From Octopus sinensis (Eukaryota): DNA of 64,000 nucleotides. The number at the start of each line of letters is the position of its first letter. The stretch's first letter is position 1. Shown one piece after another: positions 1-34,370 of this stretch. The position numbers and the translations under genes were made by a program. A model generated the notes under the pieces. That model made no database searches. It saw only the letters and a list, made by a program, of their open reading frames with translations, and had not been told where the DNA came from. The stretch is from positions 88,474,001 through 88,538,000 of the forward strand of contig NC_043003.1 in NCBI RefSeq assembly GCF_006345805.1, given 5' to 3'.

Positions 1-2195
1 AGTGAAAGCTGCATGTTTGATTTGTTCTGAAACAGTTGCTGTGTTCAAGGAATATAATTTGAAACGCCACTTTCAAACGAAGCACGCCAATTTTGGACAC
101 AATTTATCAAAACAAGAACTGCAAAAGAAAGCAAATGATCTGACAAAACGTTTGAAGCAACAGCAAAATGTGTTTGATAAAACTTCCTCTTTACAAAGGA
201 ACGCGACAAAGACAAGTTTTATATTGGCCAACAAAATTGCAAAGCAAAACAAGTCATTCGCAGAAGCAGAATTTATCAAAGATTGTATGGTTGATGCTGT
301 CAGCGTTGTGTGTCCTGAAGTTAAGTCAAAAGTAGAAGCCATTTCCCTGTCACGAAGAACTATTGTTCGTCGCATTGATGCAATTGCCGTGAATATTCAT
401 GAACAGCTGTTAACAGCCAGTGGTCGATTTCAGTGGTTTTTCTATTGCTTTAGATGAGAGTACTGATATTCAGGATACTGCTCAGTTACTCATTTACATC
501 AGAGGAATTGACGAAAACTTTGAAATTACAGAGGAATTGTTATCTATGGAGTCTCTCAAAGACACTACTACTGGAAAAGATTTGTTCAACAGTGTCATTA
601 ACAGTTCAATCAGGTCTGGATTAACCCTAAATAAACTGGCCAGCATTACAACCGATGGAGCTCCTTCACTCACCGGTAAATATTCCGGCCTTGTGAAGTT
701 GTTGAATGACAAAATCAAAGATTTTCCACTACACAGTGTGTTGTCTTTTCACTGCATCATACATCAAGAAAGCCTTTGTAAGTCATCTTTAAAACTCAAA
801 CATGTCATCGAACCTGTGGTGCGTGCAGTGAATTTAATAAGATCACGGGGATTGAAACACAGGCAATTCCGAAGTTTCTTGGAGGATGTGGAGGCTGATT
901 TTACTGATGTGCTGTACTACACAAATGTCCGCTGGTTAAGCATTGGAAAAGTTCTTAAGAGAGTATGGGACCTCAAAGCAGAGATTCTTATGTTTCTCAA
1001 AATGCAAGACATCTCCTGTGACTTTTTAAACGAAATGGAGAGTGACGAATGGGTTTGTGATTTTGCATTTGCTGTGGACATAATGCAGAAGCTGAATGAA
1101 CTTAACACAAAACTGCAAGGCAACGGTATATTTGCTCATGAATTGTACCTGGAAGTGAAAGCTTTTCAATGGAAGCTTGGACTTTTTGCCAAGCAGCTGA
1201 ATGAGCAAAAATTTATTCACTTCCCTCTGCTGAAAACACAGTCTGTTACACAAGAATCATCGGACAAGTACAGTTCCCAGTTGATGGCTTTACAAAAGGA
1301 ATTCATTAGAAGATTTGCTGATTTCAAGGCAGTTGAAGGCCTGTTCGATTTGCTTAACTCACCTCTTGTCTGTGACATTGAAACAACTACCGAGGAACTG
1401 CAGATAGAACTGATTCATTTGCAAGCCGACAATTCTTTAAAGATGATGTTTGAAAGTAAACCACTGGTCGAGTTTTATGCTTCTCTACATTCAAAAAAGT
1501 TTCAAAATCTTAAAAAATTTGCAAGAAAGATGTTTGTGTTGTTTGCATCAACTTACATATATGAGCAGACTTTCTCCATCATGAAAATTAACAAGGGGAA
1601 GAATCGATCACTTCTCACAGACTCAAATCTTCAGTCAGTGTTAAGAATCAGCACCAGCAACTTGACACCTAATTTTGACAAACTGGTAAATGACAGTAGT
1701 CAGCTGCATCATTCTCATTGACATTGTTATTTACAGAGCCGCTTTGTTTTTCAAATAAATGCTTCAGGTGACGTTTCTAATTTCAGATATCAATTCATAT
1801 TAATAAACTGTTATTTCTCTTTAAAATCTTTTATTTTGGGTATCCTAGAATTTAAGTATAATATTCATCATGGTTGTCCATAATATTAAGAGGTGGTTGT
1901 CCACAATTAGTTGGCAATTTGTAAGCAATAACAGGCTGTCCAAAATAACCGAGGTTCCTGTAATAATTTCAACTATAGGAGCAAATAACCGAAAACCATG
2001 AACCCGATACTCTAAAAAATAAATTAAATCACTTAAACCAGGAATATTTCACAAAATTTCCTTTCAATCAATTGTGTGTTTATAGGTCTATAACTGCCTT
2101 TAAAAATATTTTCACTTGATTTTTATAAATGAGGCCCGTCAAGGTTCCAAAGACGCACTGTGCGGCCCGTGATCAAAAAAGTTGGCCCACCCCTG
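1..2195 (+). mobile_element. hAT DNA transposon, Buster/Charlie/SPIN-like (GTF2IRD2-like); 5' end lies outside the window
   Basis: Transposase ORFs followed by a right TIR ...GGCCCGTGATCAAAAAAGTTGGCCCACCCCTG ending at 2195 (reverse CAGGGGTGGGCC). The next 8 bp, ACATATAC, fit the nnnTAnnn TSD pattern of Buster elements. Confidence 0.9.
2..1721 (+). pseudogene. hAT transposase split by one frameshift near 430
   Basis: N-terminal zinc-finger-like CLIC...EYNLKRHFQTKH; catalytic motifs SIALDESTD and ITTDGAPS; FHCIIHQE (CxxH); C-terminal STYIYEQTFS and RSLLTDSNL dimerisation region. ORFs 2-457 and 420-1721 overlap in different frames. Confidence 0.88.
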
Positions 2196-2611: not shown

Positions 2612-5600
2612 ATCATCATCATCATCATCATTTAACGTCCGTTCTCCATGCTAGCATGGGTTGGACGGTTCGACTGGGGATCTGGGAAGCCAGAAGGCTG
2701 CACCAGGCTCCAGTCTGATCTGGCAGTGTTTCTACAGCTGGATGCCCTTCCTAACGCCAACCACTCTATGAGTGTAGTAGGTGCTTTTTACGTGCCACCA
2801 GCACGGAAGCCAGTCAAGGCTATGCTGGCATCGGCCACGATTCGGATGGTGCTTTTTACGTGCCACCAGCATGGAAGACAGTCTGGCATCGGCCATGTTC
2901 AGATGGTGCTATTACGTGTCACCGTCTCAGGTATCACAACTGCAGTTTCTATTGATTTTGATGTTGGTGTACTTGACTCAATGCATCTTCTCAAGCACAG
3001 GGTCGAAATGGTGTCTCTTCACTTGCCACCTGCACAGGAGTCAGTCCAGCGGTCCTGGCAACTGCCGGGTGCCAGTCATAGGATTGACTCAATTTCGATT
3101 CCGATTTCACTTGCCCCAACAGGTCTTCGCAAGCAGAGTTTAGTGTCCAATGAAGGGAGGTTGGCATGGGTGCCTGTCGTCGGGTGAGGTTCGATTTCGA
3201 CTTCGCTTGCCTCAACAGGTCTTTGTGTGTCCAAGGGAGGAAAGACATGCATAAGTTGGCTGAACTCACTTGTCCTGCCAGGTCTTCTCCCGCACAGCAT
3301 ATTTCCAAAGGTCTCAGTTGCTAGTCATTGCCTCGGTGAGGCCTAAGTTCGAAGGTCGTGCTTCACCACCTTGTCCCAAGTTTTCCTGGGTCTACCTCTT
3401 CCATGGGTTCCTTCAACTGCTAGGGATTGGCACTTTTTCACACACCTATCTTCATCCATTCTCGCCACATGACCATACCAGCGCAATCGTCTCTCTTGCA
3501 CACCACAGCTGATGTTTCTTAGGTCCAACATTTCTCTCAAGGTATTAACACTCTGTCGAGTATGCACACTGACATTACACATCCATCGGAGCATACTGGC
3601 TTCATTCCTCGTGAGCTTACGCATGTCCTCAGCAGTCACGGCCCATGTTTCACTGCCATGTAGCGTGGCTGTTCGTACACATGTGTAATACAGTCTGCCT
3701 TTTACTCTGAGCGAGAGGCCCTTTGTCACCAGCAGAGGTAAGAGCTCTCTGAACTTTGCCCAGGCTATTCTTACTCTAGCAGTTACACTTCCAACACACC
3801 TGCCCCTGTTACTAACTTGGTTACCTAGGTAACGGAAGCTATTTCTAGTTTTTCTCCCTGGAATGTGGCGGAATTGGTCTCTGTGCATTTTCAGTGTTTA
3901 TTGCTCCTGAGCATCTGCCACATACAAAAACTATCTTCCTAGTTAGCCTTCCCTTGACGTTGCTGCACCTCTTATGTGTCCATAGCTTACACTTGGTGCA
4001 TCTTATAGAGTTTCTACCTACACCTTTTCTACAGATCGAGCAGGGCCATCTACCTGAAGGTTTGTCTACCTTCCTACTTATTAGGACTTTAGTTTTAGCT
4101 AGGTTGACTCTAAGGCCCCTCGATTCTAATCCCTCCTTCCACACCTGGAACTTCTTCTCCAGTTCTGATAGTGACTCAGCAATTAGAGCAAGGTCGTCAG
4201 CATAGAGGAGCTCCCAGGGGCATCCTGTCTTGAATTCCTCCGTTATTGCCTGGAGGACTATGATAAATAGGAGGGGGCTGAGGACTGAACCTTGGTGGAC
4301 CCCAACCTCTACCTTGAATTCTTCAGTGTACACGTTGCCAACCCTAACCTTACTTACAGCATCCCTGTACATGACTTGCACAGCTCTCACCAGCCATTCA
4401 TCTATCCCTAGTTTCCTCATTGACCATCAGATAAGGGATTGGGGGACCCTGTCGAAGGCTTTCTCCATGTCAATGAAAGCCAGGTACAGGGGCTTATATT
4501 TGGCTAGGTATTTCTCCTGCAGCTGTCTCACCAGAAATATGGTATCAGTGGTGCTTTTCCCTGGCACGAAACCAAACTGCATCTCATCCAAGTTGACTCT
4601 CTCCCTAATCAGTTGGGCTATGACCCGCTCCGTAACCTTCATTACCTGATCCAACAGCTTGATACCTCTGTAATTATTTGTATCTAGAGCGTCACCTTTA
4701 CCTTTGTAGCAGTTGACTATTATGCTGCTACACCAGTCATTGGGTATGACTCCTTCGTGTATCACCTGGTTAACTATACGGGTGACTAGGCTATAGCCGA
4801 CACTACCAGATATTTTAAGCATCTCTGAAGTAATTCCTGATGGGCCGAGGGCTTTCCCTGTCTTCATGCTTCTAATTGCCTTAACTACCAAAGAACTGTC
4901 AACTCGGATAGCTGGTCCCTCTGTTGGGTTGACATTCGGCAGACTCTCTTTATCCCATTCATTTTCTTTATTCAGCAACCTTTCAGTCTCCAAACCTCTC
5001 TCTTTGCAGCCTCATTTAGCGCAAGTGAACCGTCATCCATGCGAACACATTTCTCTCCTACCACATCTCGATTGTCTCTCACACACTGTCTTGCAACGTG
5101 AAATACCTCAAGTCTTTGGTCCTCACGGCACAGAACATTGGCAAATTTTTTCTTATCTGCTTCCCCTCTGGCTATATAAACCTGTCTCCTAGCTTCTCTT
5201 TTGGCAGTCTGATACAGTTCCCTGCTACCTCCGTTCTTCCAAGCCTGTTTCTTTTGTCTAATAGCCCTATCAACCACATTGTTCTACCACCACGTTACCT
5301 TGGGTCGAGTGGGGACTTTGCACCAGCTACAGATCTGGTCAGTGGCTCTCAGCAGGTTGTCCCATAGAAACCTCCAGTTGTCTTCCACATTATGTGATGC
5401 TATATCCCCTTCTATTTCATCAAGGGCTTCGAGTAATACGTTTCTAAATCTCTGTCCATTTGCAGGATCTTTAAGTTTCCAAACTCTTCTCCACCAGGCT
5501 GGTCTTGTTCTGGGCATCCATTCAGCCCCAATCCTGAAGTTGCTAACTACTAATCTATGTTGAGGGGTACATTCTTCGCCTGGGAAGGTTTTGGCATTTA

Positions 5601-6005
5601 TAAGCAGCCCTCTTTCCCTTTTTCTGGCGAGGATATAGTCAATTTGGCTGGTGTGTCTGCCAGAACGATAGGTGACTAGGTGACGGGCGGGTTTCCTGAA
5701 GTTAGTATAGCAAACCATAAGATCATTTGCATCGCAGAACTCCAGCAGTCTGGTTCCCTCCTCATTGAGGGAACCAAAACCATAGCCTCCATGTATGCCA
5801 TGGAAGTCCCCTGCACGTTGTCCAACATGTCCATTGAAATCACCAGCCACAAAAAGAAGGTCTCTGTCGTTCGTCGATGAGCTAGTCTGCAATAGGGTGT
5901 CATAGAATCAGTCTTTCTGCCCCTCTGGTAGCCCCGGCTGAGGGGCATAGGCCAAGATAATGGTAGCTGACCTATGGTGAAGCACTAAACTAATCTTAAG
6001 TACTC
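2612..6005 (-). mobile_element. RTE-clade LINE, 5'-truncated and degenerate (APE, RT, PHD-like insert, long 3' UTR, (GAT)n tail)
   Basis: Fragments GDFNGHVG/SQIDYIL (APE), NYRGIKLL, QFGFVPG, AFIDMEKAFD, VHQGSVLSP, LLYADD, RRLRWYGHV; (ATC)n tail at 2612 on the + strand. Confidence 0.93.
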
Positions 6006-8010: not shown

Positions 8011-8141
8011 GGTAGTGAAGGTGCTTGTTCTGTTATATTAATCATGCATTGATATAAGTTGTTCAATAAAGCCCGAAACATATGTAACGTAGAATCCTTT
8101 GCGTCCTGTTTTTCTTTTGATACATATATCCTATCATCTAT

Positions 8142-8493
8142 TGTGAAGGGAGCTGACTTCTCGTCGACAGCCATGATTGTCACATGCTGATGAAAGGTAA
8201 ACACCTTGAAACTCGGGTCCGTGTGTATCATGAGTTGAAGACGGGGAGGATGACTCCCCTTCACAAATACTGAGAGGACACAGATAGTGTGTCTATAGCC
8301 AGCTGGAGGAGATATCTTCCTGGGGCTACAAACTACAGTAGCATCCACCCTTAGGGGTTAGCCATATTCAAATGGCAAATATGCGTCACGGTGTGTTACC
8401 GCTACTGTTTATAACTCGCTCTGAGATTTATCATTGTTTGATTTCACTTTTTCAATATCAGTGTCAATCGACACTGGAAAAAGTATATGTATT
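8142..8493 (+). repeat. 352-bp hammerhead-containing tandem unit 1 (retrozyme-like); unit 2 starts at 8494
   Basis: TGTGAAGGGAGCTGACTTCTCGTCGAC recurs at 8142 and 8494. 8161-8390 matches 13834-14063 with 4 substitutions in 230 bp. Confidence 0.9.
8172..8232 (+). ncRNA. Type I hammerhead ribozyme, copy 1
   Basis: Stem I CACATG(8181-86)/CGTGTG(8220-25), extended by CATGAT/ATCATG across a bulge. Core CTGATGA 8187-93; stem II AAGGT-AAAC-ACCTT; GAAA 8208-11; stem III AC-TCGG-GT; GTC triplet 8217-19. Confidence 0.9.
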
Positions 8494-8751
8494 TGTGAAG
8501 GGAGCTGACTTCTCGTCGACAACCATGATTGTTATTCGTCTAGGGACCCCTCTTTCATCTGCGTTTTGAGAAATTTTGCTGCCTTTTTGTTGAGTGAGTT
8601 CGTATTTTTTGTTCGTCGTTGTTTGTGTTTACTCGTGAATTGAACAGTTGTCCGTTGTGTAACTGTAATTTTCGCCCTACGGGGCGGAAAATTCTGTGTC
8701 ATTACCTTTGAGGTAATTTTTTTTTAAACATTTGTTCTCATAATTTGAGAA

Positions 8752-10175
8752 ATGGAGTTCGACTTGGCGTCGAGGAGTGACTTTCCCGTGATGGGAAAAG
8801 GTGAACAAAAGGATACCGAAGTCAAAAAACAGTCTTTTTCGGCCGCAGTGGGCGGAACCGTAACGGATGTAGAATTTAAGATTGAACAGTTATTCGAATA
8901 CGGGAACTTGGTAAAAACCGAAGGAAATGAAATTAAACTGGTACCGCCGCAAGCGAAGATACAGGAAATAAAGGCAAAGACAGTTGTATACAAAGTTTAT
9001 TGCAACAAAGAAAAAAAAATAATGAATGTCAAGAACGAGATAGTAGAAAAGTGCTTGTCCCCGGTGTGGGACAAAATTCGCCACGTTGTTCGAGGTGCTC
9101 GCAGCGCTACCGTTGAAGCACATTTCGACTCGGCTGATGTGGCAAGAGAGGTGTCATCAATGACCTTGAAAAGTGAGGATATCATGTTGCTACCTTCGTA
9201 TATGGGGAAAAGATCAGCCAAACTACATGTAGAGGATATACCTAGAGGGTATGATATAATGTGGGTAGCAGCGGCAGTCCTGCACAACGTAGAGCGGGAA
9301 GTTTCAATTCTGCAGATGAGAAGGAAAGAGGAGGTGCACTGGAAAGGACAAACGCTAGAACTCCTCGTTCAAGCAGAAAATAAGATACTAGAAAACTTAC
9401 CCGATAGGGTATTTAATGAGGAGGGAACCTCAATGAGAGTGTCAGTGGAGGGGCGCAGACCTAGGTGCTTCAAATGTGGCGAAAAGGGTCACGTTCGCTC
9501 AAACTGCTTAAAAAAAAAGAAAATCAATGAAGCCCCTCCTCAAAGTGCTTCAAACACTGAAAAAGAAAAGGCGGAAAAAGAACCCAAGACTGCGACAAGG
9601 AAAGGAACCGAAACGGAAGATGAAAATGAACAGATGGAATATACACAGGTGACACACAAAAGAAAAAAAGATAACACCCTGGACAAACAAAGAAAAAATC
9701 AGCAAACACCGCAGAGATACATATAAAACAAATTCCCCAGCACCTACCCCCACGGCACTGTATTCATTGGAACACAGTTCGCCAAGCCCCTCCCCATAAA
9801 CAAGATTTGAAAAAATTGTTAAAAAAAAATGATAAGATTATAGCATTTGACGAGAAGAACGATAGGGTGTACAAGTATTTCAAATTTTCAAAATTTAAAC
9901 TATTCAGTAAGTCTACAGACACAAAATCAACCACTCACTTCGCAAAAATAAAGGAAGACGAGTGGAAGGAAAAAACACTACAAGAACATTTAAAGAATAA
10001 TCTTATAAGAGATGTAACGAAGGAAATACTGGAGGGTAAACTTATAACCTCGGCAACCACACCTACCCAGAGCCCGATGGCAACGCCGGTTAAGAGCCCT
10101 GCAGCTACGACCACAAGGGAGGGAGAAGGGGAAGCGGGCAGATTTAAACTGTCATGCTCCCTTTCTCAACCGTAA
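8752..10175 (+). pseudogene. Tx1 ORF1 (gag-like, CCHC zinc knuckle), one apparent frameshift near 9690
   Basis: RCFKCGEKGHVRSNC (CX2CX4HX4C). The 9807-10175 frame is open back to the A-run near 9690, so both pieces probably form one ORF. Confidence 0.8.
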
Positions 10176-10202
10176 GTTTATTTATTCTTTCTCTCTCCGA
10201 CA

Positions 10203-13200
10203 ATGGCATAGCTGGGTTGTGTGAATGTGCGTGGAATGGGGTCGAAATGGAAACAAATTTGTTTCCTGAACGACCTCACGACACACGGAGTGGACGTAGC
10301 TATTGTAACCGAGTCCAAGATGAACGGGGCCCAAGCGTTCTCGCCTCTTCTAAATGGTTTCGAGAAATTTATTTCTCCTAGCCGAGGAAGAGGAAGAGGC
10401 GTGGCAGTCCTTATCAGGAAGAGCTTGGACTTGCAGGTAAGTACTGTCTTTCTGGACCCAGAAGGCAGGCTGGTCGTTGTGGATGTGACCCACGTAAGTA
10501 AACAGTCCTTCAGGTTGGTAGGTGTCTACGCTCCGAATGAGTGTAGGCAGGCGGGTTTTTTTCGGAATCTGGAGCACTTTTTAGCGACGTCGAAAACGGT
10601 AGTCTTAGTAGGGAACTTTAACACTGTCCTTGAAGCGCGGGTTGACAGTGTTGGGGAACCCTAGCCTCAAGGGTCTGCTAGAGAGCTTTGATCTAGTGGA
10701 CCGTTATCGACTGGATGAGCCGAGCGTTCCACAGTGGACGTGGAGTAACAACGACGGCTCACACAGATCGTATATAGATAGGATATTCGTTAGGAAAAGA
10801 GATAAGGATACGTTTAGTTGTCCACAGTTTCACATTGTGCCTTACACGGATCACAAATTTGTGACCTGTAGGGTGCAATTAGATAAGTGCCATAGACAGC
10901 GACCCGGGTACTGGAAGCTGAACAAGTCTATTTTGAATTGTGAAGACTTCCGTACCCGGATTAAGGTGTTAGTACAGAGGGCATTGTGTGGCACCATCAT
11001 TAACAATAGATGGTGGCACTCCCTCAAAAGAGCCATTCGTTCAGAGTCCATTAGATTTAGCAATCAGCTAAGATTAGATAGGTCTAGGATAGAGGACGTT
11101 TTAGTTAAGAATCTAAACGAGGCAATGGAAGCTGGCTCTGCATCCGGAGTGATGACGGCAAGGACGGTATTGTACCGTCACCTTAACTCCAAACACGAAG
11201 GTTGCAGAGTCAGAGCTAAGCTACGCGCTGGGAAACGAGAAGGTATTAACGTTGCCGGATGGGCCCGTCGAGTGGAGAGTCAGAGAGGTAACAAAGCTTC
11301 AATCAAGTCTTTAACTGACGAACAGGGACAAAAGATCTATGGACAGGAGGAGATGCAAAAGTTTCTTCACCAGCATTTCGCCCGCGTGTTCGGGGGTGGT
11401 GTGGTGCCGGAGCGGGGGAGGGCCTTAAAGGACTTCCTAGCCGGCGGACCGTGGCTCTCGGGGCGTGAGGTGGAGTGCTGTGAAGGAGCGATCACTTCCA
11501 CGGAGATAGAGGGGATACTGGCTGGATGCGCCGGGGAGAAGTCGCCGGGGTTGGATGGTCTGCCCTACGAGTTTTACCAAAGTATGCCGGACTTGTTCGG
11601 GGGAATAATGGCAGGCGTCTACGCGAACTGGCAGCAGAATGGGAGAATTCCCAGTTCTGTAAGCCGAGGAGTGGTGACGCTAATCCAGAAAGACCCGAGC
11701 AAGGGGGATAACATTAGTAATTACAGGCCCATAACTCTACTTAATGTAGAGTTAAAGATTTTGGCCAAGGTGTTGGCAAAAAGGTTGACGATTGTCGTGG
11801 AGAAACTTGTAGGGAAAGCACAGACATGTGCAATTCCAGGCAGGTCGATCCAGGACAATCTTCACCTTATACGCTACACCTTAGATAGGGTGGGTAAATT
11901 AACCGGCAAGGGCGGGGTAATGGTCCATTTAGACCAAAGTAAAGCGTTCGATAGGGTAAACCAATAAGTACCTGGCGACGGTCCTCGAAGTGGCTGGACT
12001 GGGCCCTGAATTTCGCGGGTGGATCTCCGCTATGTATAGCGGCATCAAGTCCACCGTCCAGATAAACGGATACCTAACGGAACCGTTTTCGATCGAATGT
12101 TCAGTTCGTCAAGGGTGCCCCTTGTCACTACTTTTGTACGTGTTGGCTCTCGAGCCATTGCTGCGAAAGTTGGAGAGGCTGGGAAGTAACCCGGATGAGA
12201 TCGGAGGTGGGAGGACGGTTACTGCTTATGCGGATGACGTCACCCTCATCGTGTCCAATGAGGCCCAGCTACCTTGTGTAGAAGATGCTATCAGAGGATA
12301 CGAGGCGGTGGCAGTAGCAAGGGTTAACAAGGACAAGTTGGTTGGCTTGCGCCTCGGCACCTGGAGGAGCAAGTCGAAATCGTCCAGTGTCGTGGGACAC
12401 TGGACGGATGGTCCTGTTAAGTTGCTAGGAGTTTGGTTTGGGTCAGACTCCCAAACGGAGAGGAATTGGAGTGAGGTGACGAACAAGGTGGAGGCCATAG
12501 TACGGACCTGGTCCGGAAGGTCTCTGTCCTTGAAAGGAAGGGCGGAGGTGGCACAGATGTTCATTGCATCTGTAATCACTTACCGCCTGACCGCTGTCCC
12601 TTGCCCCGATTCATGGCTTAGCAAGTTGGAGCGAATCCTTTTCCGCTTTTTGTGGAAGGGAGGAAAGCCACTTGTGAGGCGCTCCATTTGCTGCCAGGAA
12701 CCGTTAAAGGGTGGGTTAGGAATGCCTTGGTTGATGATGCGCAGGCATGCGTTGAGGCTGAAGCATCTCTGGCACCACCTGGAGGGTGATAAGGTGTGGA
12801 GTCTGCTGGCAGGGGAATTTTTCCCGAGACCGGCTTCCTTAGTGAATTTTAAACCCGGTCGCATCAAAAGACGGAATCTGACTTTATGGCAAAAGGAGTG
12901 CCGACAGGCACTCACGCTGATCCACAAGGCGGGCAAGGCTGGCTGCGGAAATACCACCTCGGTATTTTATAGCAGGCTGGTAGAGGCAAAGAACGACGAC
13001 GTCCTAGGAGGGGCTCTGGGGTTTGACGAAGACCAGCTTACCAACCTGTTTAAAAAGACTTTCAGGACGGGGTATTTGGATAGTTTCCAAAGATCCCTGG
13101 CCTGGCAGTGTTATAGGAATGCTTTACCTGTTCGCGAGAAGTTATCGCGGCACGGAATTTCAGTGCCACCGACGTGTCCAAGATGCGGGTTGGATGATGA

Positions 13201-13576
13201 AACCGTCCAGCACGCTTTTGTACACTGTCGGAAGTTGTCAGACTTGATAAGTTACGCAGAACACGTGTTATCGCATCTGGGACGAGTACAACTGTCGGCT
13301 GAGTCTATGATTAAGATGATACCGCCAACTGGACTCTCGAAGGAAGGTGAGGCATGTTTTCACTGCACGGTTGCAGTAGTAAAAGAATGCATGTGGCGTA
13401 CAAGAATGGAAGGAGTCGCAATAGGATCCTTTGTCTCAGGCCCCGGCTTGCTCACTTACTTCAGATATCATCTGAAGAGCAAAATGGGGCTGGAAAAGAA
13501 GATCTTACCACGAGGTGTGTATGAAAAAAGATGGAAGGAAGTGGCAAAAAAGGTGGGTGTCAGAAACCCAGCTTAA
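10203..13576 (+). pseudogene. Tx1 ORF2 (APE endonuclease, reverse transcriptase, C-terminal zinc finger), disrupted
   Basis: NVRG, VTES, GNFN, SYIDRIF, TDHK (APE); GYWKLN; NYRPITLLN; LDQSKAFDRV; RQGCPLS; AYADD; CPRCGLDDETVQHAFVHC. Lesions: in-frame TAG at 10209, frameshifts near 10650 and 11970. Confidence 0.9.
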
Positions 13577-13833
13577 CTATGGATGGAGGAGAGGAAAGAA
13601 AAGCTGCGGGGCCTTATAGGTTGCCGGGGTTTAAAATATATCAGTAAGAGCGCAAGTTAATGTAATGTTGTAATGTTCTATTGGTCATGCAAAGGACAAT
13701 TTAAATACAAATTTTGTTTAAGGAATAATCCATATATTATGGAAAATTTTTAATCGAACCACTTAACTGTTTTTTGTATGTATGTCCTGTATTGTCCTTC
13801 TATGTAATGATTTTCTAATCGTAATAAAGAAAT

Positions 13834-14063
13834 TCGTCGACAACCATGATTGTCACATGCTGATGAAAGGTAAACACCTTGAAACTCGGGTCTGTGTGTA
13901 TCATGAGTTGAAGACGGGGAGGATGACTCTCCTTCACAAATACTGAGAGGACACAGATAGTGTGTCTATAGCCAGCTGGAGGAGATATCTTCCTGGGGCT
14001 ACAAACTACAGTAGCATCCACCCTTAGGGGTTAGCCATATTCAAATAGCAAATATGCGTCACG
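13834..14063 (+). repeat. Remainder of hammerhead tandem unit 2, truncated by a (TA)n/(TG)n microsatellite
   Basis: 230 bp matching 8161-8390 with 4 substitutions. Confidence 0.9.
13845..13905 (+). ncRNA. Type I hammerhead ribozyme, copy 2
   Basis: Same fold as copy 1: CTGATGA 13860-66, GAAA 13881-84, GTC 13890-92. The first stem I pair is G-U instead of G-C. Confidence 0.88.
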
Positions 14064-14068
14064 ATATG

Positions 14069-14099
<31 letters not shown>

Positions 14100-14146
14100 G
14101 TCTGTATATATATATATGTGGGTGTGTGTGTCTATATATACATGTC

Positions 14147-14214
<68 letters not shown>

Positions 14215-14224
14215 TGTCTATATA

Positions 14225-14685
14225 TATCACTTCAACGACGCCGTGAACGCTACATTATCTGTATGATGTGGAAAATATTCCATCAGCACTGTCCGAATGA
14301 TGTTGGCATCACCTTCAAAATACATCCAAGGCTTGGACCATGTGCCATCCGTCCACAACAAAAATCTAAATCGCATCACATGACGACAATACGGCACAAC
14401 TATTTCACATCAATTGGACCCACTCTCTTCAACACTACACCAGGACACGTCAAAAAAGAAACTGACCACACAAAATTCAAGAAGTCTTTGGACAAATTCC
14501 TTCAAACAGTACCGGACAAACCACCCACACCCAGATATGTCTCCGCAAACAATAACTCTCTGCTCGAATGGGCCTTTGTGCCCAAATCCTGAACTGAATG
14601 ACTTCACCAGGTGGTGCTATAAAGTTAGACATGGCCTGGGCCAATACTGGCCAAAACCTTTCTAAGTTATTCTAAGTTATATACA
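14225..14685 (+). mobile_element. 3' fragment of a CR1/L2-group LINE
   Basis: TIRHNYFTSIGPTLFN...FKKSLDKFLQTVPDKPPTP...NNSLLEW, then a short TTCTAAGTTA tail repeat. Confidence 0.7.
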
Positions 14686-15278: not shown

Positions 15279-16805
15279 CTTCTAAAAGTATGTAAGAGAG
15301 TCCTAGCAAGACCACTGCAGTTCCTCTTTCAGAGCTTCCTTGCAACTGGCAAACTCCCAAGAAAACTGAAGGAAGGTAAAATATGCCCTATTCATAAAGG
15401 AGGTAGCAGAGCAGAGGCCAAGAACTACAGACCTATCTCTCTGACCTCACACATCAGCAAGGTCATGGAACGAATAGTCAGAAGGAAACTAATCGCGTTC
15501 CTTGAAGAACATGGTTTCTGACCAGGAAGAAGCTGCCTAACTCAGCTCCTACAACACTATGACTGGGTGCTGAAACAACTGCTCAACCACTCAAATGTGG
15601 AAGTCATATATCTTGACTTTGCAAAGGCCTTTGATAAAGTCGATCATGGAATGATATGTAACAAACTGCGTGATCTTGGCGTAGTTGGAAAATTGGGAGA
15701 ATGGCTTCATGACTTTCTGAAGGATAGAAGCCAGGTGGTAGTAGCCAATGGGGCCACTTCCATTAACACGCAAATAGTGAGCGGTATTCCGCAAGCCACT
15801 GTTCATAATGGCCCTCTCAGACATGCCCTCAGCCACGCAGAGAGCCACGATCACAAATTATGCAGATGATACAAAAGTTTCACAGGCAATACAGAACCCT
15901 GAAGACACTATGCACCTGCAATGTGAGCTGGACAAAATATACAAGTGGACTGAAAAGAATAGCATGCAGTTCAATGCTGAAAAGTTTCAAGCTTTATGCT
16001 ATCAGCATGCAAAACTAAATGCAATACCCAATAAATATACTGGACCTGGAGGGATTGCAATCCCAGAGGCAGAATCAGTGCGAGACTTGGGTATTTACAT
16101 GAGTAATGATGCAACCTTTCATGTGCATTTTGCTAAATTGGCAATGAAATGTAGGCGGCTGACCGGATGGATTCTTAGAACCTTTAGAACAAGAGACCAG
16201 GAAACCATGATGGTCCTCTGGAGGACACTTGTTCTAAGCCACTTTGACTATTGCTCTCAGCTATGGTCACCATCCAGTATCAAATTAATCACAGAACTTG
16301 AGGCTATCAAACGAAGCTACACGAAGAAGATAGCCTCTGTGCAGCATATAAGCTATTGGGAAAGACTCAATATACATAATATACATCTGGAAGATCTTAG
16401 AAGGACTTGTCCCAAACTTTGGCATTGAGAGTTATACAAATACTGGGCGCCACTGCATAGTGCCAAGGACTCGAAATTTGCCATCAAGATGTAGGACAAG
16501 ATACTGTGATAGCCTGGGCTTCAGAGGCCCACAGCTCTTGAATATCCTTCTAAAGAACCTGAGAGACCTGCATGGGGTGGATACAGATGTCTTTAAAATA
16601 AAACTGTCAGGTGTCCCAGATGAACCAACTTCATGGCAGGAGGTGCAGATGAGGGCAGCTGCATCGAACTCTCTCATGCACCAAATGGCAATTGCTAAAA
16701 AGCATTTGTGAAGTAAAATCATGTAGCAACACCAAATGGCGGTGCCCCAGCATGGCCACAGCTCGTGAGCTGAAACTAGATAAAATAAATAAAATAAATA
16801 AAATA
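15277..16805 (+). mobile_element. CR1/L2-group LINE, 5'-truncated RT region with tail
   Basis: KNYRPISLTS, YLDFAKAFDKVDH, NYADDT, HFDYCSQLW. Same family as 31184-34370. Confidence 0.88.
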
Positions 16806-21914: not shown

Positions 21915-22391
21915 TGGGGGGTGCAGAAATATAGGGGAGAACCAGTGGGAGGGGTGGTTCAGAGGACAGGTAATAGGCAAGTAGAACGTAGGATATCGAA
22001 GAGGGGTAATGCATGGTGAAATAGCGTATTGAAGAGGGGGGTTCAAAGAGTAGACACCTATAATGGTGGTGGTGGGGGGGTGCAGAAATATAGGGGAGCA
22101 CCAGTGGGAGGGGTGGTTCAGAGGACAGGTTCTAGGCAAGTAGAACTAGGTAGGATATCGAGAGAGGGGTAATGCATGGTGAAATGGCGTATTGAAGAGG
22201 GGGGTTCAAAGAGTAGACACCTATAATGGTGGTGGGGGGGGGGTGCAGAAATATAGGGGAGCACCAGTGGGAGGGGTGGTTCAGAGGACAGGTCTAGGCA
22301 AGTAGAACGTAGGATATCGAGAGAGGGGTAACGCATGGTGAAATAGCGTATTGAAGAGAGGGGTTCAAAGAGTAGACACCTATAATGGTGG
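21915..22391. repeat. About 160-bp tandem repeat, 3 copies
   Basis: GTGCAGAAATATAGGGGAG at 21921, 22080 and 22243. Confidence 0.92.
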
Positions 22392-22474: not shown

Positions 22475-23683
22475 CCGCGAAGAACCGGCAGCCAATTTCT
22501 AATCAGCCCTGTAAGGGAGATAGATCTTAAATATCTATAAAGATAACTAGTGAATTATACAGAATATGCAAAAACGAGGCGAGGCTGAAATAGTAAACAG
22601 AGTGGCGACTAGGGGGATCAGAATAATAATAATTAATAAATAATAATAATAAATAGAGATACGGATGAATTAAAGTTCAAAGATTTCTTATCTTGGGATC
22701 ACTTCGTTTACGGACAGACTTGGCAAAAGGAATTCGGAATCAAGAGTGAGGCAGGTTACTAGCTTAAGTATGCATAGCCATGTCGAGGAGTAGGAAGAGG
22801 AGTCCAGACAGACAATGTAAAAAGAGGGGGAGAGAAACACCGCGAAGAACCGGCAGCCAATTTCTAATCAGCCCTGTAAGGGAGATAGATCTTAAATATC
22901 TATAACGATAACTAGTGAATTATACAGAATATGCAAAATCGAGGCGAGGCTGAAATAGTAAACAGAGTGGCGACTAGGGGGATCAGAATAATAATAATTA
23001 ATAAATAATAATAATAAATAGAGATACGGATGAATTAAAGTTCAAAGATTTCTTATCTTGGGATCACTTCGTTTACGGACAGACTTGGCAAAAGGAATTC
23101 GGAATCAAGAGTGAGGCAGGTTACTAGCTTAAGTATGCATAGCCATGTCGAGGAGTAGGAAGAGGAGTCCAGACAGACAATGTAAAAAGAGGGGGAGAGA
23201 GAAAACCCGCGAAGAAGAACCGGCAGCCAATTCTAATCAGCCCTGTAAGGGAGATAGATCTTAAATATCTATAACGATAACTAGTGAATTATACAGAATA
23301 TGCAAAAACAAGGCGAAGCTGAAATAGTAAACAGAGTGGCGACTAGGGGCATCATAATAATAATAATTAATAATAATAGTAATAAATAGAGATACGGATG
23401 AATTAAAGTTCAAAGATTTCTTATCTTGGGATCACTTCGTTTACGGACAGACTTGGCAAAAGGAATTCGGAATCAAGAGTGAGGCAGGTTACTAGCTTAA
23501 GTATGCATAGCCATGTCGAGGAGTAGGAAGAGGAGTCCAGACAGACAATGTAAAAAGAGGGGGAGAGAAACACCGCGAAGAACCGGCAGCCAATTTCTAA
23601 TAAGCCCTGTAAGGGAGATAGATCTTAAATATCTATAACGATAACTAGTGAATTATACAGAATATGCAAAAACGAGGCGAGGT
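22475..23683. repeat. About 366-bp tandem repeat, at least 3.3 copies, running into the gap
   Basis: CCGCGAAG at 22475, 22840, 23207 and 23573. Confidence 0.93.
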
Positions 23684-23783
23684 NNNNNNNNNNNNNNNNN
23701 NNNNNNNNNNNNNNNNNNNNNNNNNNNNNNNNNNNNNNNNNNNNNNNNNNNNNNNNNNNNNNNNNNNNNNNNNNNNNNNNNNN
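23684..23783. other. Assembly gap (100 N)
   Basis: Run of N. Confidence 0.99.
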
Positions 23784-28139: not shown

Positions 28140-29318
28140 ATCGTTTCATTCATTAAGACTATTTATAAGCGGAAGTTTGGCTTTAATTATAAAGGAAATT
28201 TCATTAATACATAATATACATTTTCTATTTCTAGTACTATACACCGGTGCTGTTGTAACGATTTTCCAATGTAAATTGTAGTTAATTCCCCCATCCTTTA
28301 CTTCCCATATATAGTCACTTAATCCTGTAGTATTCTTCCTATTTCTATTTCTAAAAGTATACCTGTGGTGATTCAGCCTCGGTTTCATATTGTTTTTGGT
28401 CATTCCCACATATAACTTACTATCAGATTGTGTACTTACTATGTCATGCTGGTGAGACCCATATTGGAGTATGGGATTCAAGCCTCTTCTCCTTATCTCC
28501 TCAAAGACATACAGCATCTCGAAAGAGTCCAGAAGCTGGCTACCCGCATGGTTCATGGTCTCAAAAATTTGTCCTACGAAGAAAGGCTGAGGACGCTCGA
28601 CCTTTATTCTCTTGAAAAACGCCGCTGCCGTGGTGATCTCATTCTCGCCCACAACATCATAAGCGGAAAGTGTAACCTCTCGCAAAAGCTGTTCTTCACT
28701 CCTGCTCCAGAGCGTCGGCTGCGGGGTCATTCCGAAAAGCTCTACCTGCGACGATTTCATCTCAATCGAAGGAGAGGAGCTTTCTCCGTCCGGGTTGCGG
28801 ATCCGTGGAACAAGCTGCCAGACGAGATGGTGAAGATGCCGACGACCGCTTTGTTCAAAGCCTCCCTTGACCTCAAGTGGCCTGAACTCTTTACATGAAC
28901 ACCACCCTGTACTTAACTCCATGTCCCCCTACATGGCCTTGCTATTTGCTTTTGAGCCAAATTAACTAACTAACTAACTAACTACATTGATACATTACTT
29001 CCTTTCTAATACAGTTATCATTGAATACACAATTACTGCTGATTCTACAATTACATGTTTTATGTAGCTGTGTGGGGTTTATATTATTGGAACGGATAGT
29101 CATTACATTATTGGTACTGTGGCTATTGTTGATACCAATATTGTTATTATTGTTGTTACTACTGTGATTACTAGTAATAGTATAATAATAATAATAATAA
29201 TTATTATTATTATTATTATTGGTTAAAATAATATTATTATTTTCATTTATATTGTTGCTGTTATTATTATTATTATCATCATCATCATCATCATCATCAT
29301 TACCAAGAGCACAATTTC

Positions 29319-31183: not shown

Positions 31184-34100
31184 ACTTGATTTGATTTGAT
31201 CTAGTTTCAGCTCATGGGCTGTGGCCATGCTGGGGCATCGCCTTTGCTGTTGCTATATAATTTTATCTCACGGATGCTTTTTTAAGAATTGATCTTTGGT
31301 GCATGAGGGAGTTTGATGCCACTGCCCTCATCAGCACCTCCTGTTGTGATGTTGGCTCACCTGGGACACTTCACAGGAAGCGGTCCAGTTTTATTTTGAA
31401 GACACCTACATCCACCCCATGCAGGTCCCTCAGGTTCTTCGGAAGGATATTAAAGAGCTGTTGTCCTCTGAAGCTCAGGCTCTTGCAGTATATTGTCCCA
31501 AATCATGATGGCAAATTTCGAGTCCTTGGCACGATGCAGTGGCGCCCAGTTCTAGTATTTGTGTAACTCTCGATGCCAAAGTTTGGGACAAGTCCTTCCA
31601 AGATCTTCCAGATGTATATTATGGCATATCTTTCTTGCCTATGCTCTAAGGAATAGAGTCTTAATCTCTTGAGTCTTTCCCAATAGCTTATATGCTGCAT
31701 AGAGGCTATCTGCTTCGTGTAGCTTCGTTGGGTTGCCTCAAGTCCTGAGATTAATTTGACACTGGTTGGTGACCATAGCTGAGAGCAATAGTCAAAGTGG
31801 CTTAGGACAAGTGTCCTCCAGAGGACCTTCATAGTTTCCTGATCTCTTGTTCTAAAGGTTCTAAGAATACATCCGGTCAGCCGCCTACATTTCATTGCCA
31901 ATTTAGCAACATGCACATGAAAGGTTGCATCATTACTTGTGTAAATACCCAGCTCTTGCACTGATTGTGCCTCTGGGATTGCAATCCCTCCAGGTCGAGT
32001 GTATTTAATAGGTATTGCATTTAGTTTTGCATGCTGATAGCATAAAGCTTGAAACTTTTCAGCATTGAACTGCATGCTATTCTTTTCAGCCCACTTGTAT
32101 ATTTCGTCCAGCTCACATTGCAGGTGCATAGTGTCTTCAGGGTTCTGTATTACCAGTGAAACTTTTCTATCATCTGCATAACTTGTGATCGCGGCTCTTT
32201 GCATGGCTGAGGGCATGTCTGAGAGAGCCATTATGAACAGTAGTGGTCCCAAAACAGTGCCTTGTGGAACACTGCTCACTATTTGCATGTCATTGGAGGT
32301 GACCCCATTGGCTACTACCACCTGACTTCTATCCTTCAGAAAGTCATGAAGCCATTCTCCCAATTTTCCAACTATGCCAAGATCACGCAGTTTGTGACAT
32401 ATCATTCCATGATCAAGTTTATCAAAGGCCTTTGCAAAGTTGAGGTATATCACTTCCACATTTGAGTGGTTGAGCAGCTGTTTCAGCACCCAGTCATAGT
32501 GTTGTAAGAGCTGAATCAGACAGCTTCTACCTGGTTGGAAACCATGTTGGATGTCAGGCAGCAAGTCATTTTCTTCTGACTATTCGTTCCGTGACCTTGC
32601 TGATGTGTGAGGTCAGAGAGATAGGTCTGTAGTTCTTGGTCTCCGCTCTGCTACATCCTTTATGAATAGGGCATATTTTACCCTCCTTCAGTTTTCTTGG
32701 AAGTTTGCCAGTTACAAGGAAGCTCTGAAAGAGGAACTGCAGTGGTTTTGCTAGGACTCTCTTACATACTTTTAGAAGGATTGCTGGGAATTTATCAGGG
32801 CCAGTAGTTGAGTTTGGGTTCATTTCATCTATAGCTCTTATTATATCGTCTTCCTTTATATTGATGTAATCGATCATCATTGCCTCTGTTTTTATATCTG
32901 CAGTAGTAAAAAAGTCAGTCGGATTGCTGACATGCAAGTGTCCGGGGGGGGGGGGGATACTTTTGAATTGCTCATTTAGTATTTCACTTATCCTCATTGG
33001 GCTTCCTGTGAGTGTACCATCTTTTTCAAGGATGGCCCTATGCTGCAGTGCACTGCAGCTGTTTCTTTGGTAAACTTGTAGAAAGCTCTGGGGTTAGATT
33101 TTATGCTGTCTATAGCCCAGGCTTCTTTGTCTGTTCTTTCTTTTTTATGGGAGAGTTGCAGAATTTTTTCAATCTCCAGCAGTTGTATTTTCACTGCTTT
33201 CAATTTGTTTGTTTAGGCGATTTGAAACTTTTATACGCCGTCTCATAAGAATTTTCCTCTCCCTGGGGATTTTGTTTTTGTATACAGTGGCTTTTCTCTC
33301 TGGGACACATTTGTAGCATATGGCTTGCATTACAGACATGAATTGCTGAAGTTTCATGTTGATATCCGATGAGGAGAGACATTTAGGCCAGTTTTGTTTG
33401 AGGCTCTCTTTCTCAATTTGTTTCCAGTTTGCCTTATGGAATTTCAAGCTGGAAAGATTCTGAGAGTTTCTAGTAGGCTGCATGTCCATGCTTTCCTTTG
33501 GCCCGTACATGGTCAGCTCTACCGTGTTGTGATCTGAGAGTAGTGTCAATGTAACTTTCACATTATGGATGAGATCCATATTATTTGTGAAGCAGAGATC
33601 CAGTGTGTTACCTGCCCTGGTTGGTTGGAGTATTACTTGCTCCATGTACAGTGTTGATGAGGTTCAGAGGGGACTTCACCTGTCCTTGTTCACATTGTGT
33701 CATTCCTGAGAGAGAAAGGCCCTCGGGCCATCTGACATTGTGCAGATTGAAGTCTCCCATAAGAAGTACGCTTATGTGTTGTTCTAATGTGACTAGAACT
33801 TCTATTTTTGTAAGGCAGTTTTCAAACTTACCTACATGATTTGGAGCATCTGGAGGGCGATATGTAGCACATATAACTACACTGAGTTGCCTTATATGTA
33901 CAATTAGTGTGTCACTGAATTTGAGTGTGACAAAAGGACCTGGGGTGTGAGGTCTTTGCGGTTGTACATAGCAACTCCACCATGACTCCTTTCTTTTCTG
34001 TCGGTCCGTAATACAACATACTGTGGTATGTGTATTTCTGCATTTGCTATATCTGGTTTCGGGTGTGTTTCTGTAAGTGCTATGCATAAGGCTTGATTGC

Positions 34101-34370
34101 ATGCAACAAGGTCTCTCAAGAAAGGGATTTTTGTCCTGTTACTAAGTGTTAACAGTCCTCTGATGTTCAGTAAGAGCACTGATGTGATGTGTGTTGTTGC
34201 CAGTGGTGCCCACCTTGGGTCTATTTGCTGTGGTGATCTTGTGTATTGGGGATAGTCCCATCTGTGAGATTGATATAGCCAGGTCAGCTGCTGTACAATC
34301 TTTTGTGCTATGACAAAAAAGATTGTTGTTCAGCAGTTACCCTTTCCACATGTTGATAGGTCTGATTTGT
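31184..34370 (-). mobile_element. CR1/L2-group LINE, degenerate ORF2 (APE and RT) with tail
   Basis: LNIRGL, ALTETH, RTDRKERSHGGV, GDFNL, LDLCFTN, NYRPISLTS, VPQGTVLGP, SYADD; (ATTTG)n tail at 31184 on the + strand. Confidence 0.92.

What the first reader, a model, noticed from the sequence alone, without database searches (positions are those of the whole stretch)
8513..13853. Tx1-clade retrotransposon inserted precisely into a hammerhead repeat: candidate new target specificity
Seen: exact 20-bp TSD TCGTCGACAACCATGATTGT on both sides. Both copies carry the unit-2 allele (CAA), whereas unit 1 has CAG, so the flanks are a TSD within unit 2 rather than LTRs. The site is CpG-rich and unlike the TT/AAAA site of generic L1, and there is no long poly(A). 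Known: Tx1-clade families are often sequence-specific for multicopy targets (Keno for U2 snRNA, Dewa for tRNA spacers, Mutsu for 5S rRNA, Xenopus Tx1L for a DNA transposon). Inference: this family may target ribozyme/retrozyme arrays, a target I do not recall being described. A single insertion cannot prove specificity.
Basis: partly seen in the sequence, partly recalled or inferred. Interest (0 to 1): 0.9.

Follow-up and report, generated by a model that had tools for sequence, protein, structure and literature searches.

The report
LINE inserted in a hammerhead-ribozyme repeat
A dead 5.3-kb LINE retrotransposon sits inside one unit of a short tandem repeat that carries a hammerhead-ribozyme motif; the insertion is real and clean, but nothing available shows that the element aims at such repeats, so it is best read as an ordinary nested transposon insertion.

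Summary
An exact 20-bp duplication (8513-8532 and 13834-13853) flanks a 5,301-bp LINE. Removing the LINE and one duplicate restores a 352-bp repeat unit in register. Each unit carries a type-I hammerhead motif, which is Rfam Hammerhead_1's only hit but scores below threshold (19.3 bits). The LINE has a CCHC-knuckle ORF1 and an APE-RT-zf-RVT ORF2, closest to human L1 ORF2p. It is inactivated by one stop and two frameshifts. It ends in a fixed AATAAAGAAAT terminus without poly(A).

The proposed hammerhead target specificity could not be tested. The window holds one copy, and no same-family sequence exists in any searchable collection (best 56-59% protein identity, about 70% DNA identity). The closest relatives with readable ends lie in AT-rich or microsatellite DNA, not hammerhead repeats. 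One of them, in Argonauta, has a 16-bp duplication. The window is transposon-dense, so nesting is expected by chance. Tx1-clade placement is plausible from the domains but was not tested phylogenetically.

Verdict: an ordinary TPRT insertion of a new, divergent L1/Tx1-group family. Specificity for ribozyme repeats remains a minority hypothesis (about 0.2). Tabulating flanks in the source genome would settle it.

The parts
8141..8492 (+). Unit 1 of the 352-bp tandem repeat (retrozyme-like)
   Evidence: Self-BLAST gives the period and register. Sequence read.
8168..8237 (+). Hammerhead motif copy 1. Helix I is 8168-8186 paired with 8220-8237. Core CUGAUGA is at 8187-8193. Helix II is AAGGU/ACCUU with loop AAAC. 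GAAAC follows, then a minimal helix III. Predicted cleavage is after C8219.
   Evidence: Motif finder; RNAfold forms helices I and II; Rfam RF00163 match at 8181-8225, 19.3 bits, E=0.0094.
8493..8532 (+). First 40 bp of unit 2 (left flank of the insertion)
   Evidence: 97.5% identical to 8141-8180.
8513..8532 (+). Left copy of the 20-bp target-site duplication
   Evidence: Exact match.
8533..13833 (+). LINE, 5,301 bp, full-length but inactivated
   Evidence: Bounded by the TSD. Domains. It is the only copy in the window.
8533..8751 (+). LINE 5' UTR
   Evidence: Lies upstream of the ORF1 ATG. It shows no similarity to the repeat unit.
8752..9726 (+). ORF1, 324 aa, with a CCHC zinc knuckle at residues 238-252
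   Evidence: Pfam zf-CCHC E=1.4e-4; no Transposase_22 or RRM hit. Weakly similar to the ORF1 of relatives.
10203..13576 (+). ORF2 (APE, RT, zf-RVT). Broken by a stop at codon 3 (10209-10211) and by frameshifts near 10656 and 11965.
   Evidence: Three-frame translation; Pfam Exo_endo_phos, RVT_1 and zf-RVT; PDB L1 ORF2p E=1.7e-62.
13577..13833 (+). LINE 3' UTR. AATAAA is at 13823-13828. The terminus is ...AATAAAGAAAT, with no poly(A).
   Evidence: Sequence. The terminal motif is shared with the Argonauta and JGI relatives.
13834..13853 (+). Right copy of the 20-bp target-site duplication
   Evidence: Exact match.
13834..14069 (+). Remainder of unit 2, in register with 8161-8396
   Evidence: 97.5% identity over 236 bp; empty-site join.
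13841..13910 (+). Hammerhead motif copy 2, kept whole because the TSD restores the 5' strand of helix I. Predicted cleavage is after C13892, 59 nt past the LINE's 3' end.
   Evidence: Motif finder; fold.
14064..14220 (.). (TA)n/(TG)n microsatellite that truncates unit 2
   Evidence: Sequence; TRF.

Best explanation
A full-length LINE of the L1/Tx1 group entered unit 2 of a 352-bp hammerhead-bearing tandem repeat (a non-LTR-retrozyme-like repeat) by ordinary target-primed reverse transcription, and it has since decayed. Inferred steps follow. The element's APE nicked the bottom strand opposite top-strand CTTC^TCGT, at 8512/8513. Reverse transcription began at the element's fixed 3' terminus ...AAUAAAGAAAU, not at a poly(A) tail. 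The top strand was cut 20 bp downstream at GATTGT^CACATG, and repair duplicated those 20 bp. What is shown: the exact TSD, restoration of the repeat register, the LINE's domain content, and the conserved 3' terminus. What is inferred: the nick positions and their order. The choice of this site most likely reflects no dedicated specificity for ribozyme repeats. It is a nested insertion in transposon-dense DNA by a family with loose or unknown site preference. The hammerhead downstream stays intact only because the TSD happens to regenerate the 5' strand of helix I.
For: Exact 20-bp TSD and gap-free empty-site reconstruction. APE, RT, zf-RVT and a CCHC ORF1; best PDB match is human L1 ORF2p. A 52%-identical full-length relative in Argonauta hians has a 16-bp TSD (TATTTTTAAAATTTGT) in AT-rich DNA beside (TATT)n. 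A JGI relative abuts (ATT)n, and a Logan relative with about 70% DNA identity runs into A/T-rich DNA and (TA)n. None of them is in a hammerhead repeat. The poly(A)-less ...AATAAAGAAAT end is shared across these relatives, so it is a lineage trait and not a mark of site specificity. The LINE UTRs carry no target-derived sequence. The window also holds at least four other LINE remnants and a hAT fragment, so nesting is expected.
Against: With one copy, chance and specificity predict the same picture. The site (TCGTCGAC..., 45% GC, 2 CpG) is unlike the AT-rich sites of the relatives. The LINE has the same orientation as the hammerhead. The insertion is full-length with clean junctions. Many Tx1-clade families are target-specific, including for satellites and other transposons (PMC4494074). 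Distant relatives at 39-40% identity form head-to-tail tandem arrays, which hints at unusual insertion behaviour in the wider group.
Confidence: 0.62

Rival explanations
1. The family is sequence-specific for this hammerhead repeat. Its endonuclease recognises the CTTC^TCGTCGAC region of the unit, so most copies sit at this exact position.
For: Many Tx1-clade families target multicopy sequences such as U2, U5, 5S, satellites, microsatellites, DNA transposons and LTR elements (PMC4494074). Here the junctions are precise, the copy is full-length, the site is not AT-rich, and the element is co-oriented with the target. ORF1 is of the CCHC type regarded as Tx1-consistent.
Against: No second copy could be examined anywhere. 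The nearest relatives are not in hammerhead repeats. Tx1 membership is itself untested. The lack of poly(A) is a lineage trait.
Confidence: 0.2
2. The LINE exploits the repeat's ribozyme. Read-through transcripts from the repeat array would be cut at C8219 and C13892, releasing a LINE RNA with a 313-nt leader and a 59-nt trailer made of target sequence. The trailer could anneal to the nicked target and guide reinsertion. This resembles R2 processing, except that the ribozyme is supplied by the target.
For: The geometry allows it. The LINE and both hammerheads lie on the same strand. The downstream hammerhead is intact because of the TSD. AATAAA lies only 5 nt from the element's end, so normal 3' processing would fall in the flank. 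Retrozyme repeats are reported to be highly transcribed in animals (PMC7229834).
Against: This rests on geometry alone. Orientation is a 50% coincidence. The hammerhead scores below the Rfam threshold, has an A-U pair at 10.1-11.1, and has a 2-bp helix III, so its activity is unproven. The LINE carries no retrozyme-derived sequence at either end, which repeated cycles of such transcripts would tend to leave. The copy is dead.
Confidence: 0.08
3. The flanking hammerhead repeats are LTR-like terminal repeats of one composite element, as in Penelope-like elements or plant LTR retrozymes, rather than a target.
For: 236-bp direct repeats with hammerheads lie on both sides of the coding region. Penelope-like elements carry hammerheads in their terminal repeats (PMC4209133).
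Against: The left flank contains an extra 40-bp start of a second unit that stops exactly where the right flank resumes, minus a 20-bp overlap. That is the signature of an insertion into a tandem dimer. The coding part is APE+RT of L1 type, not RT+GIY-YIG. Relatives of the LINE have no such repeats.
Confidence: 0.03

Closest known systems
Tx1-clade target-specific LINEs (Tx1L in Tx1D, Keno in U2, Mutsu in 5S, Kibi/Koshi in microsatellites, Tx1-Mar in a Mariner family)
   Same: APE-RT ORF2 of the L1 group, ORF1 with a CCHC knuckle, and insertion into a multicopy repeat with clean junctions. Targeting of satellites and of other transposons is already known in this clade (PMC4494074).
   Different: Specificity in those families rests on many copies at one site, whereas here there is one copy. 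Clade membership was not tested by phylogeny. No reported member targets a ribozyme repeat (searches found none).
Human LINE-1 (ORF2p structures 8uw3, 8sxt)
   Same: Best structural-database match, covering APE through RT (E=1.7e-62). TPRT with a TSD of 16-20 bp.
   Different: No poly(A) tail. The fixed terminus is ...AATAAAGAAAT. ORF1 is a CCHC type rather than Transposase_22. The insertion site is not TT/AAAA.
Metazoan non-LTR retrozymes (Cervera and de la Pena 2020, PMC7229834)
   Same: The host repeat is a tandem unit of 352 bp, within the reported 150-450 bp, with a type-I hammerhead in each unit and GC below 50%.
   Different: Only 1.7 units are seen. Genome copy number and circular RNA are unknown. 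The hammerhead is below the Rfam threshold and has an A-U pair at 10.1-11.1.
R2 elements with an HDV-like ribozyme
   Same: A site-specific LINE that is co-transcribed with its target and released by a self-cleaving ribozyme. This is only a model for the novel reading.
   Different: The R2 ribozyme belongs to the element and lies at its 5' junction. Here the ribozymes belong to the target. R2 uses a restriction-like endonuclease, not an APE.
Penelope-like elements with hammerheads in their terminal repeats
   Same: Hammerheads with a very short helix III associated with a retroelement (PMC4209133; bioRxiv 10.64898/2026.07.22.740005 links animal retrozymes to PLEs).
   Different: The coding element here is an APE LINE that is inserted into the repeat rather than bounded by it.

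Membership tests
APE-type LINE, L1 superfamily | N-terminal apurinic-type endonuclease domain | tested here: met
   Pfam Exo_endo_phos E=2.8e-8. L1 endonuclease crystal structures also match.
APE-type LINE, L1 superfamily | Reverse transcriptase followed by a C-terminal Cys-rich domain, with closest similarity to L1 ORF2p | tested here: met
   RVT_1 and zf-RVT. Human L1 ORF2p E=1.7e-62 over residues 7-863, against R2 at about 1e-22 over the RT only.
APE-type LINE, L1 superfamily | Target-site duplication from staggered nicks | tested here: met
   Exact 20-bp TSD. The Argonauta relative has 16 bp.
APE-type LINE, L1 superfamily | Poly(A) tail (typical of L1 proper) | tested here: not met
   The element ends ...AATAAAGAAAT, and so do its relatives.
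Tx1 clade | RT domain groups with Tx1 reference elements in a phylogeny (RTclass1/Repbase) | not testable with these tools
   No Tx1 reference protein could be obtained. The papers hold no supplements, and no named Tx1 protein appeared among the database hits.
Tx1 clade | ORF1 of the RRM/CCHC-knuckle type rather than Transposase_22 | tested here: inconclusive
   zf-CCHC was found and Transposase_22 is absent, but no RRM was detected by Pfam. The criterion comes from PMC5203782.
Target-specific LINE (for the hammerhead repeat) | Many independent copies at the same position and orientation in the target | not testable with these tools
   One copy in the window. No same-family sequence in the protein, metagenome, viral or prokaryote-genome collections.
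Target-specific LINE (for the hammerhead repeat) | Relatives share the target | tested here: not met
   The Argonauta, JGI and Logan relatives are flanked by AT-rich or microsatellite DNA. No hammerhead motif occurs in any of the related loci scanned, L001-L010.
Type I hammerhead ribozyme | Conserved core CUGANGA...GAAA...UH with helices I, II and III in type-I order | tested here: met
   Both copies match. The two differences between units keep pairing: G.U to A-U at 8170, and C-G to U.G at 8220.
Type I hammerhead ribozyme | Reaches the Rfam RF00163 gathering score | tested here: not met
   19.3 bits against 34. E=0.0094 on a 77-nt stretch with full model coverage. Missed in the larger scans.
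Type I hammerhead ribozyme | Self-cleavage | not testable with these tools
   This needs an in vitro transcript. The A10.1-U11.1 pair and the 2-bp helix III may lower activity or require dimers.
Metazoan non-LTR retrozyme | Tandem repeat of 150-450 bp with a type-I hammerhead in each unit | tested here: met
   352-bp period, 1.7 units, one motif per unit. Definition from PMC7229834.
Metazoan non-LTR retrozyme | Multicopy in the genome and expressed as linear and circular RNA | not testable with these tools
   There is no other copy in the window, and the hammerhead pattern is absent from all three scanned collections.

The most novel reading that the evidence does not exclude
This LINE family is dedicated to hammerhead/retrozyme repeats and uses the target's own ribozymes. 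Co-transcripts would be trimmed at the flanking hammerheads, leaving a 59-nt target-derived 3' trailer that guides the next insertion to the same site. That would be a new target class for Tx1-like elements and the first LINE known to borrow a ribozyme from its target.
Probability: 0.12. Interest if true: 0.65.

Novelty: new member of a known kind. Interest (0 to 1): 0.25.

Why it matters
As it stands, this is a well-resolved nested transposon insertion, and it documents a divergent L1/Tx1-group LINE family, probably from a cephalopod-like genome. If the family did prove specific for hammerhead repeats, it would add a ribozyme-bearing mobile repeat to the known targets of site-specific LINEs. 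It would also raise the question of whether a LINE can rely on a ribozyme supplied by its target, which matters for understanding how retrozymes and LINEs interact. None of that is shown here.

Tried and rejected
1. Looked for other copies in the window with blastn and tblastn. Only unrelated LINE remnants appeared.
2. Exact look-up of the window's LINE proteins found none in the collection.
3. Ran three homology searches: the 528-aa C-terminal piece, the 1,123-aa read-through ORF2, and a 220-aa C-terminal piece meant to catch short-contig fragments. The best identities were 56-59%.
4. Scanned metagenome, viral and prokaryote-genome contigs for the hammerhead core. All gave 0 hits.
5. Ran protein-guided locus searches in the same three collections. 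They returned only a 39% relative in a contaminated MAG.
6. Fetched 17 related loci. No hammerhead motif occurred in the ten scanned for it (L001-L010), and none of the 16 compared by BLAST (all but L011) resembled the repeat unit.
7. Tested whether the LINE UTRs share sequence with the repeat, either as a SINE-like partner or as target-derived ends. Scores matched the shuffled controls.
8. Tested whether the RT at 31.5-34.1 kb is a Penelope-like element. It is another APE LINE. Only a weak, isolated GIY-YIG hit remains at 28146-28922.
9. Tried to obtain Tx1 reference sequences from paper supplements. None are held.
10. The LTR-like reading of the flanks was rejected on the repeat register.
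Full report
**Observation**

The 20-mer TCGTCGACAACCATGATTGT occurs exactly at 8513-8532 and 13834-13853. It occurs with one mismatch at 8161-8180, and shuffled windows gave no match. Self-comparison shows a 352-bp tandem repeat. Unit 1 is 8141-8492. Unit 2 starts at 8493, is interrupted after 8532, and resumes at 13834 in register with 8161. It runs to 14069, where a (TA)n/(TG)n microsatellite cuts it off. Joining 8493-8532 to 13854-14069 gives 256 bp that align without gaps to unit 1 with 6 mismatches. The bases just outside the duplicated 20-mer differ on both sides. This is a simple insertion of 5,301 bp with a 20-bp target-site duplication (TSD), not a pair of LTRs.

**The host repeat**

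Each unit contains CACAUG-CUGAUGA-AAGGU-AAAC-ACCUU-GAAAC-UCGG-GUC^CGUGUG. That is the full type-I hammerhead core, a 5-bp helix II, a minimal helix III, and a long helix I that continues as CCAUGAU/AUCAUG beyond an internal loop.

- A pattern finder requiring the core and all three helices gave exactly these two hits in the window. Block shuffles gave a mean of 0.015 hits.
- Rfam found nothing in the whole window or in 300-460-nt stretches.
- On a 77-nt stretch, Hammerhead_1 (RF00163) was the only hit. It covered the full model at 19.3 bits, E=0.0094, below the gathering score of 34.
- The 10.1-11.1 pair is A-U rather than the usual G-C, and helix III has 2 bp. From general knowledge of hammerheads, activity is therefore unproven and may need dimers.
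- The two differences between the units inside the motif both preserve pairing.

A tandem unit of this size with a type-I hammerhead fits the published description of metazoan non-LTR retrozymes (PMC7229834). The TSD covers the 5' strand of distal helix I. Because it is duplicated, the downstream hammerhead remains whole.

**The inserted element**

- ORF1 (8752-9726) has a CCHC zinc knuckle. No Transposase_22 or RRM was detected.
- ORF2 (about 10203-13576) has APE, RT and zf-RVT domains. It is broken by a stop at codon 3 and by frameshifts near 10656 and 11965.
- The read-through ORF2 matches human L1 ORF2p best (E=1.7e-62, APE through RT). R2 proteins match only over the RT at about 1e-22.
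- The element ends ...CGTAATAAAGAAAT with no poly(A).

It is therefore an L1-superfamily LINE. The CCHC-type ORF1 is what the literature regards as consistent with the Tx1 clade (PMC5203782). I could not obtain Tx1 reference sequences, so the clade assignment was not tested by phylogeny.

**Search for other copies**

- The window has no second copy. The only other matches are unrelated LINE remnants at 4160-4855, 15324-15791 and 59087-59482.
- The exact proteins are not in the 15-billion-protein collection.
- Three homology searches, sized to catch intact ORF2, large fragments and short-contig fragments, gave at best 56-59% identity.
- The hammerhead core pattern gave 0 hits in metagenome, viral and prokaryote-genome contigs.
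- Protein-guided locus searches of the same collections gave only a 39% relative.

**What the relatives show**

- A relative in Argonauta hians, about 50% identical over the whole of ORF2, is full-length. It is flanked by a 16-bp TSD, TATTTTTAAAATTTGT, in AT-rich DNA next to (TATT)n.
- A JGI metagenome relative ends ...AATAAAAGAAATC and runs straight into (ATT)n.
- Logan contigs with about 70% DNA identity to the window's LINE run into A/T-rich DNA and (TA)n.
- The ten related loci scanned with the motif finder (L001-L010) contain no hammerhead motif, and none of the 16 loci compared by BLAST (all but L011) resembles the 352-bp unit.
- The terminal ...AATAAAGAAAT motif is shared by four termini. 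This confirms the 3' boundary at 13833 and shows that the lack of poly(A) is a lineage trait.
- The LINE's UTRs share nothing with the repeat unit.

**Interpretation**

The structure is what target-primed reverse transcription produces. A bottom-strand nick fell opposite CTTC^TCGT, priming occurred at the fixed 3' terminus, a top-strand nick fell 20 bp downstream at GATTGT^CACATG, and fill-in followed. The nick positions are inferred from the TSD.

Whether the site was chosen specifically cannot be decided from one copy.

In favour of specificity:
- Many Tx1-clade families target multicopy sequences, including satellites and other transposons (PMC4494074).
- The site is unlike the AT-rich sites of the relatives.
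- The copy is full-length, and it has the same orientation as the ribozyme.

Against specificity:
- Relatives do not share the target.
- Tx1 membership is unverified.
- The window is dense with transposons: at least four other LINE remnants and a hAT fragment. Nesting is therefore expected.
- Any LINE sitting in any recognisable repeat would have prompted the same idea.

I put ordinary nested insertion at about 0.6, dedicated hammerhead targeting at about 0.2, and a ribozyme-exploiting variant of that idea at about 0.1. The geometry for the last is real: cleavage sites lie 313 nt upstream and 59 nt downstream of the LINE on the same strand. It remains only geometry.

**Novelty and score**

The LINE family is new to the searchable collections but of a known kind. 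The host repeat is a plausible new retrozyme-like family. No paper in the library describes a LINE that targets hammerhead repeats, so the hypothesis would be new if true. It would still be a new target for a known behaviour. Interest is 0.25.

Noticed in passing
L006-L009 (ENA ERZ21867824, contigs ctg88761c and ctg122906l): Relatives at 39-40% identity form head-to-tail tandem arrays of apparently intact LINEs, with periods of 6.82 kb (ORF1 of 718 aa plus ORF2 of 1,155 aa) and 6.60 kb (ORF1 of 546 aa plus ORF2 of 1,153 aa). Their protein clusters have 732 and 385 members. A solo truncated copy (L010) ends GAAATAAAA. Rfam found no small-RNA gene in the spacer.
   Followed up: partly
L004/L005 (CAXXMW010000012.1, labelled MAG 'uncultured Arenicella sp.'): A 19.9-kb contig of a bacterial MAG consists of an animal-type LINE repeated in tandem every 6.55 kb at 99% identity. 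It is probably host contamination of the bin. P0005, labelled Herbaspirillum MAG, is a similar case.
   Followed up: partly
L001 12014-12653 (Argonauta hians): The sister LINE carries two 3' UTR copies in tandem, with termini at 12283 and about 12653. The 16-bp TSD encloses both. ARAGORN found no tRNA in the spacer between them.
   Followed up: partly
window 9807-10175 (+): A 122-aa ORF lies between ORF1 and ORF2, in ORF2's frame, with no Pfam hit and no match in relatives. It may be a former C-terminal extension of ORF1 that a frameshift has cut off. Relatives have ORF1 of 546-718 aa.
   Followed up: partly
window 22475-23682 and 21916-22391: Two further tandem repeats: 365 bp x 3.3 at 96%, and 159 bp x 3. 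They lie next to the 100-N assembly gap at 23684-23783. Neither contains a hammerhead motif by my finder.
   Followed up: partly
window 28146-28922 (-): A 258-aa ORF with a weak GIY-YIG hit (E=0.0048, below the Pfam cut-off). It may be a remnant of a Penelope-like element, which would be relevant because animal retrozymes are proposed to derive from PLEs.
   Followed up: no
window 3343-5892 (-), 15324-16428 (+), 31503-34102 (-), 59087-60777 (-), 420-1721 (+): Other transposon remnants: a LINE with RT plus a PHD finger, an RT fragment (15324-16428), an RT remnant seen only by tblastn (59087-59482), one LINE with Exo_endo_phos_2 plus RT, and a weak hAT dimerisation-domain fragment. The region is transposon-dense and rich in (TA)n.
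   Followed up: partly
window 14220-14660 (+): Just past the microsatellite that truncates unit 2 lies what looks like the coding 3' end of a different LINE. It is followed by a short TAAGTTATTC direct repeat.
   Followed up: no
L012-L016 (Logan SRR11869384-94): The closest DNA relatives of the window's LINE, at about 70% identity over 1.5 kb, come from one series of sequencing runs. The contigs share the (TA)n-rich character of the window, so the species may be related.
   Followed up: no
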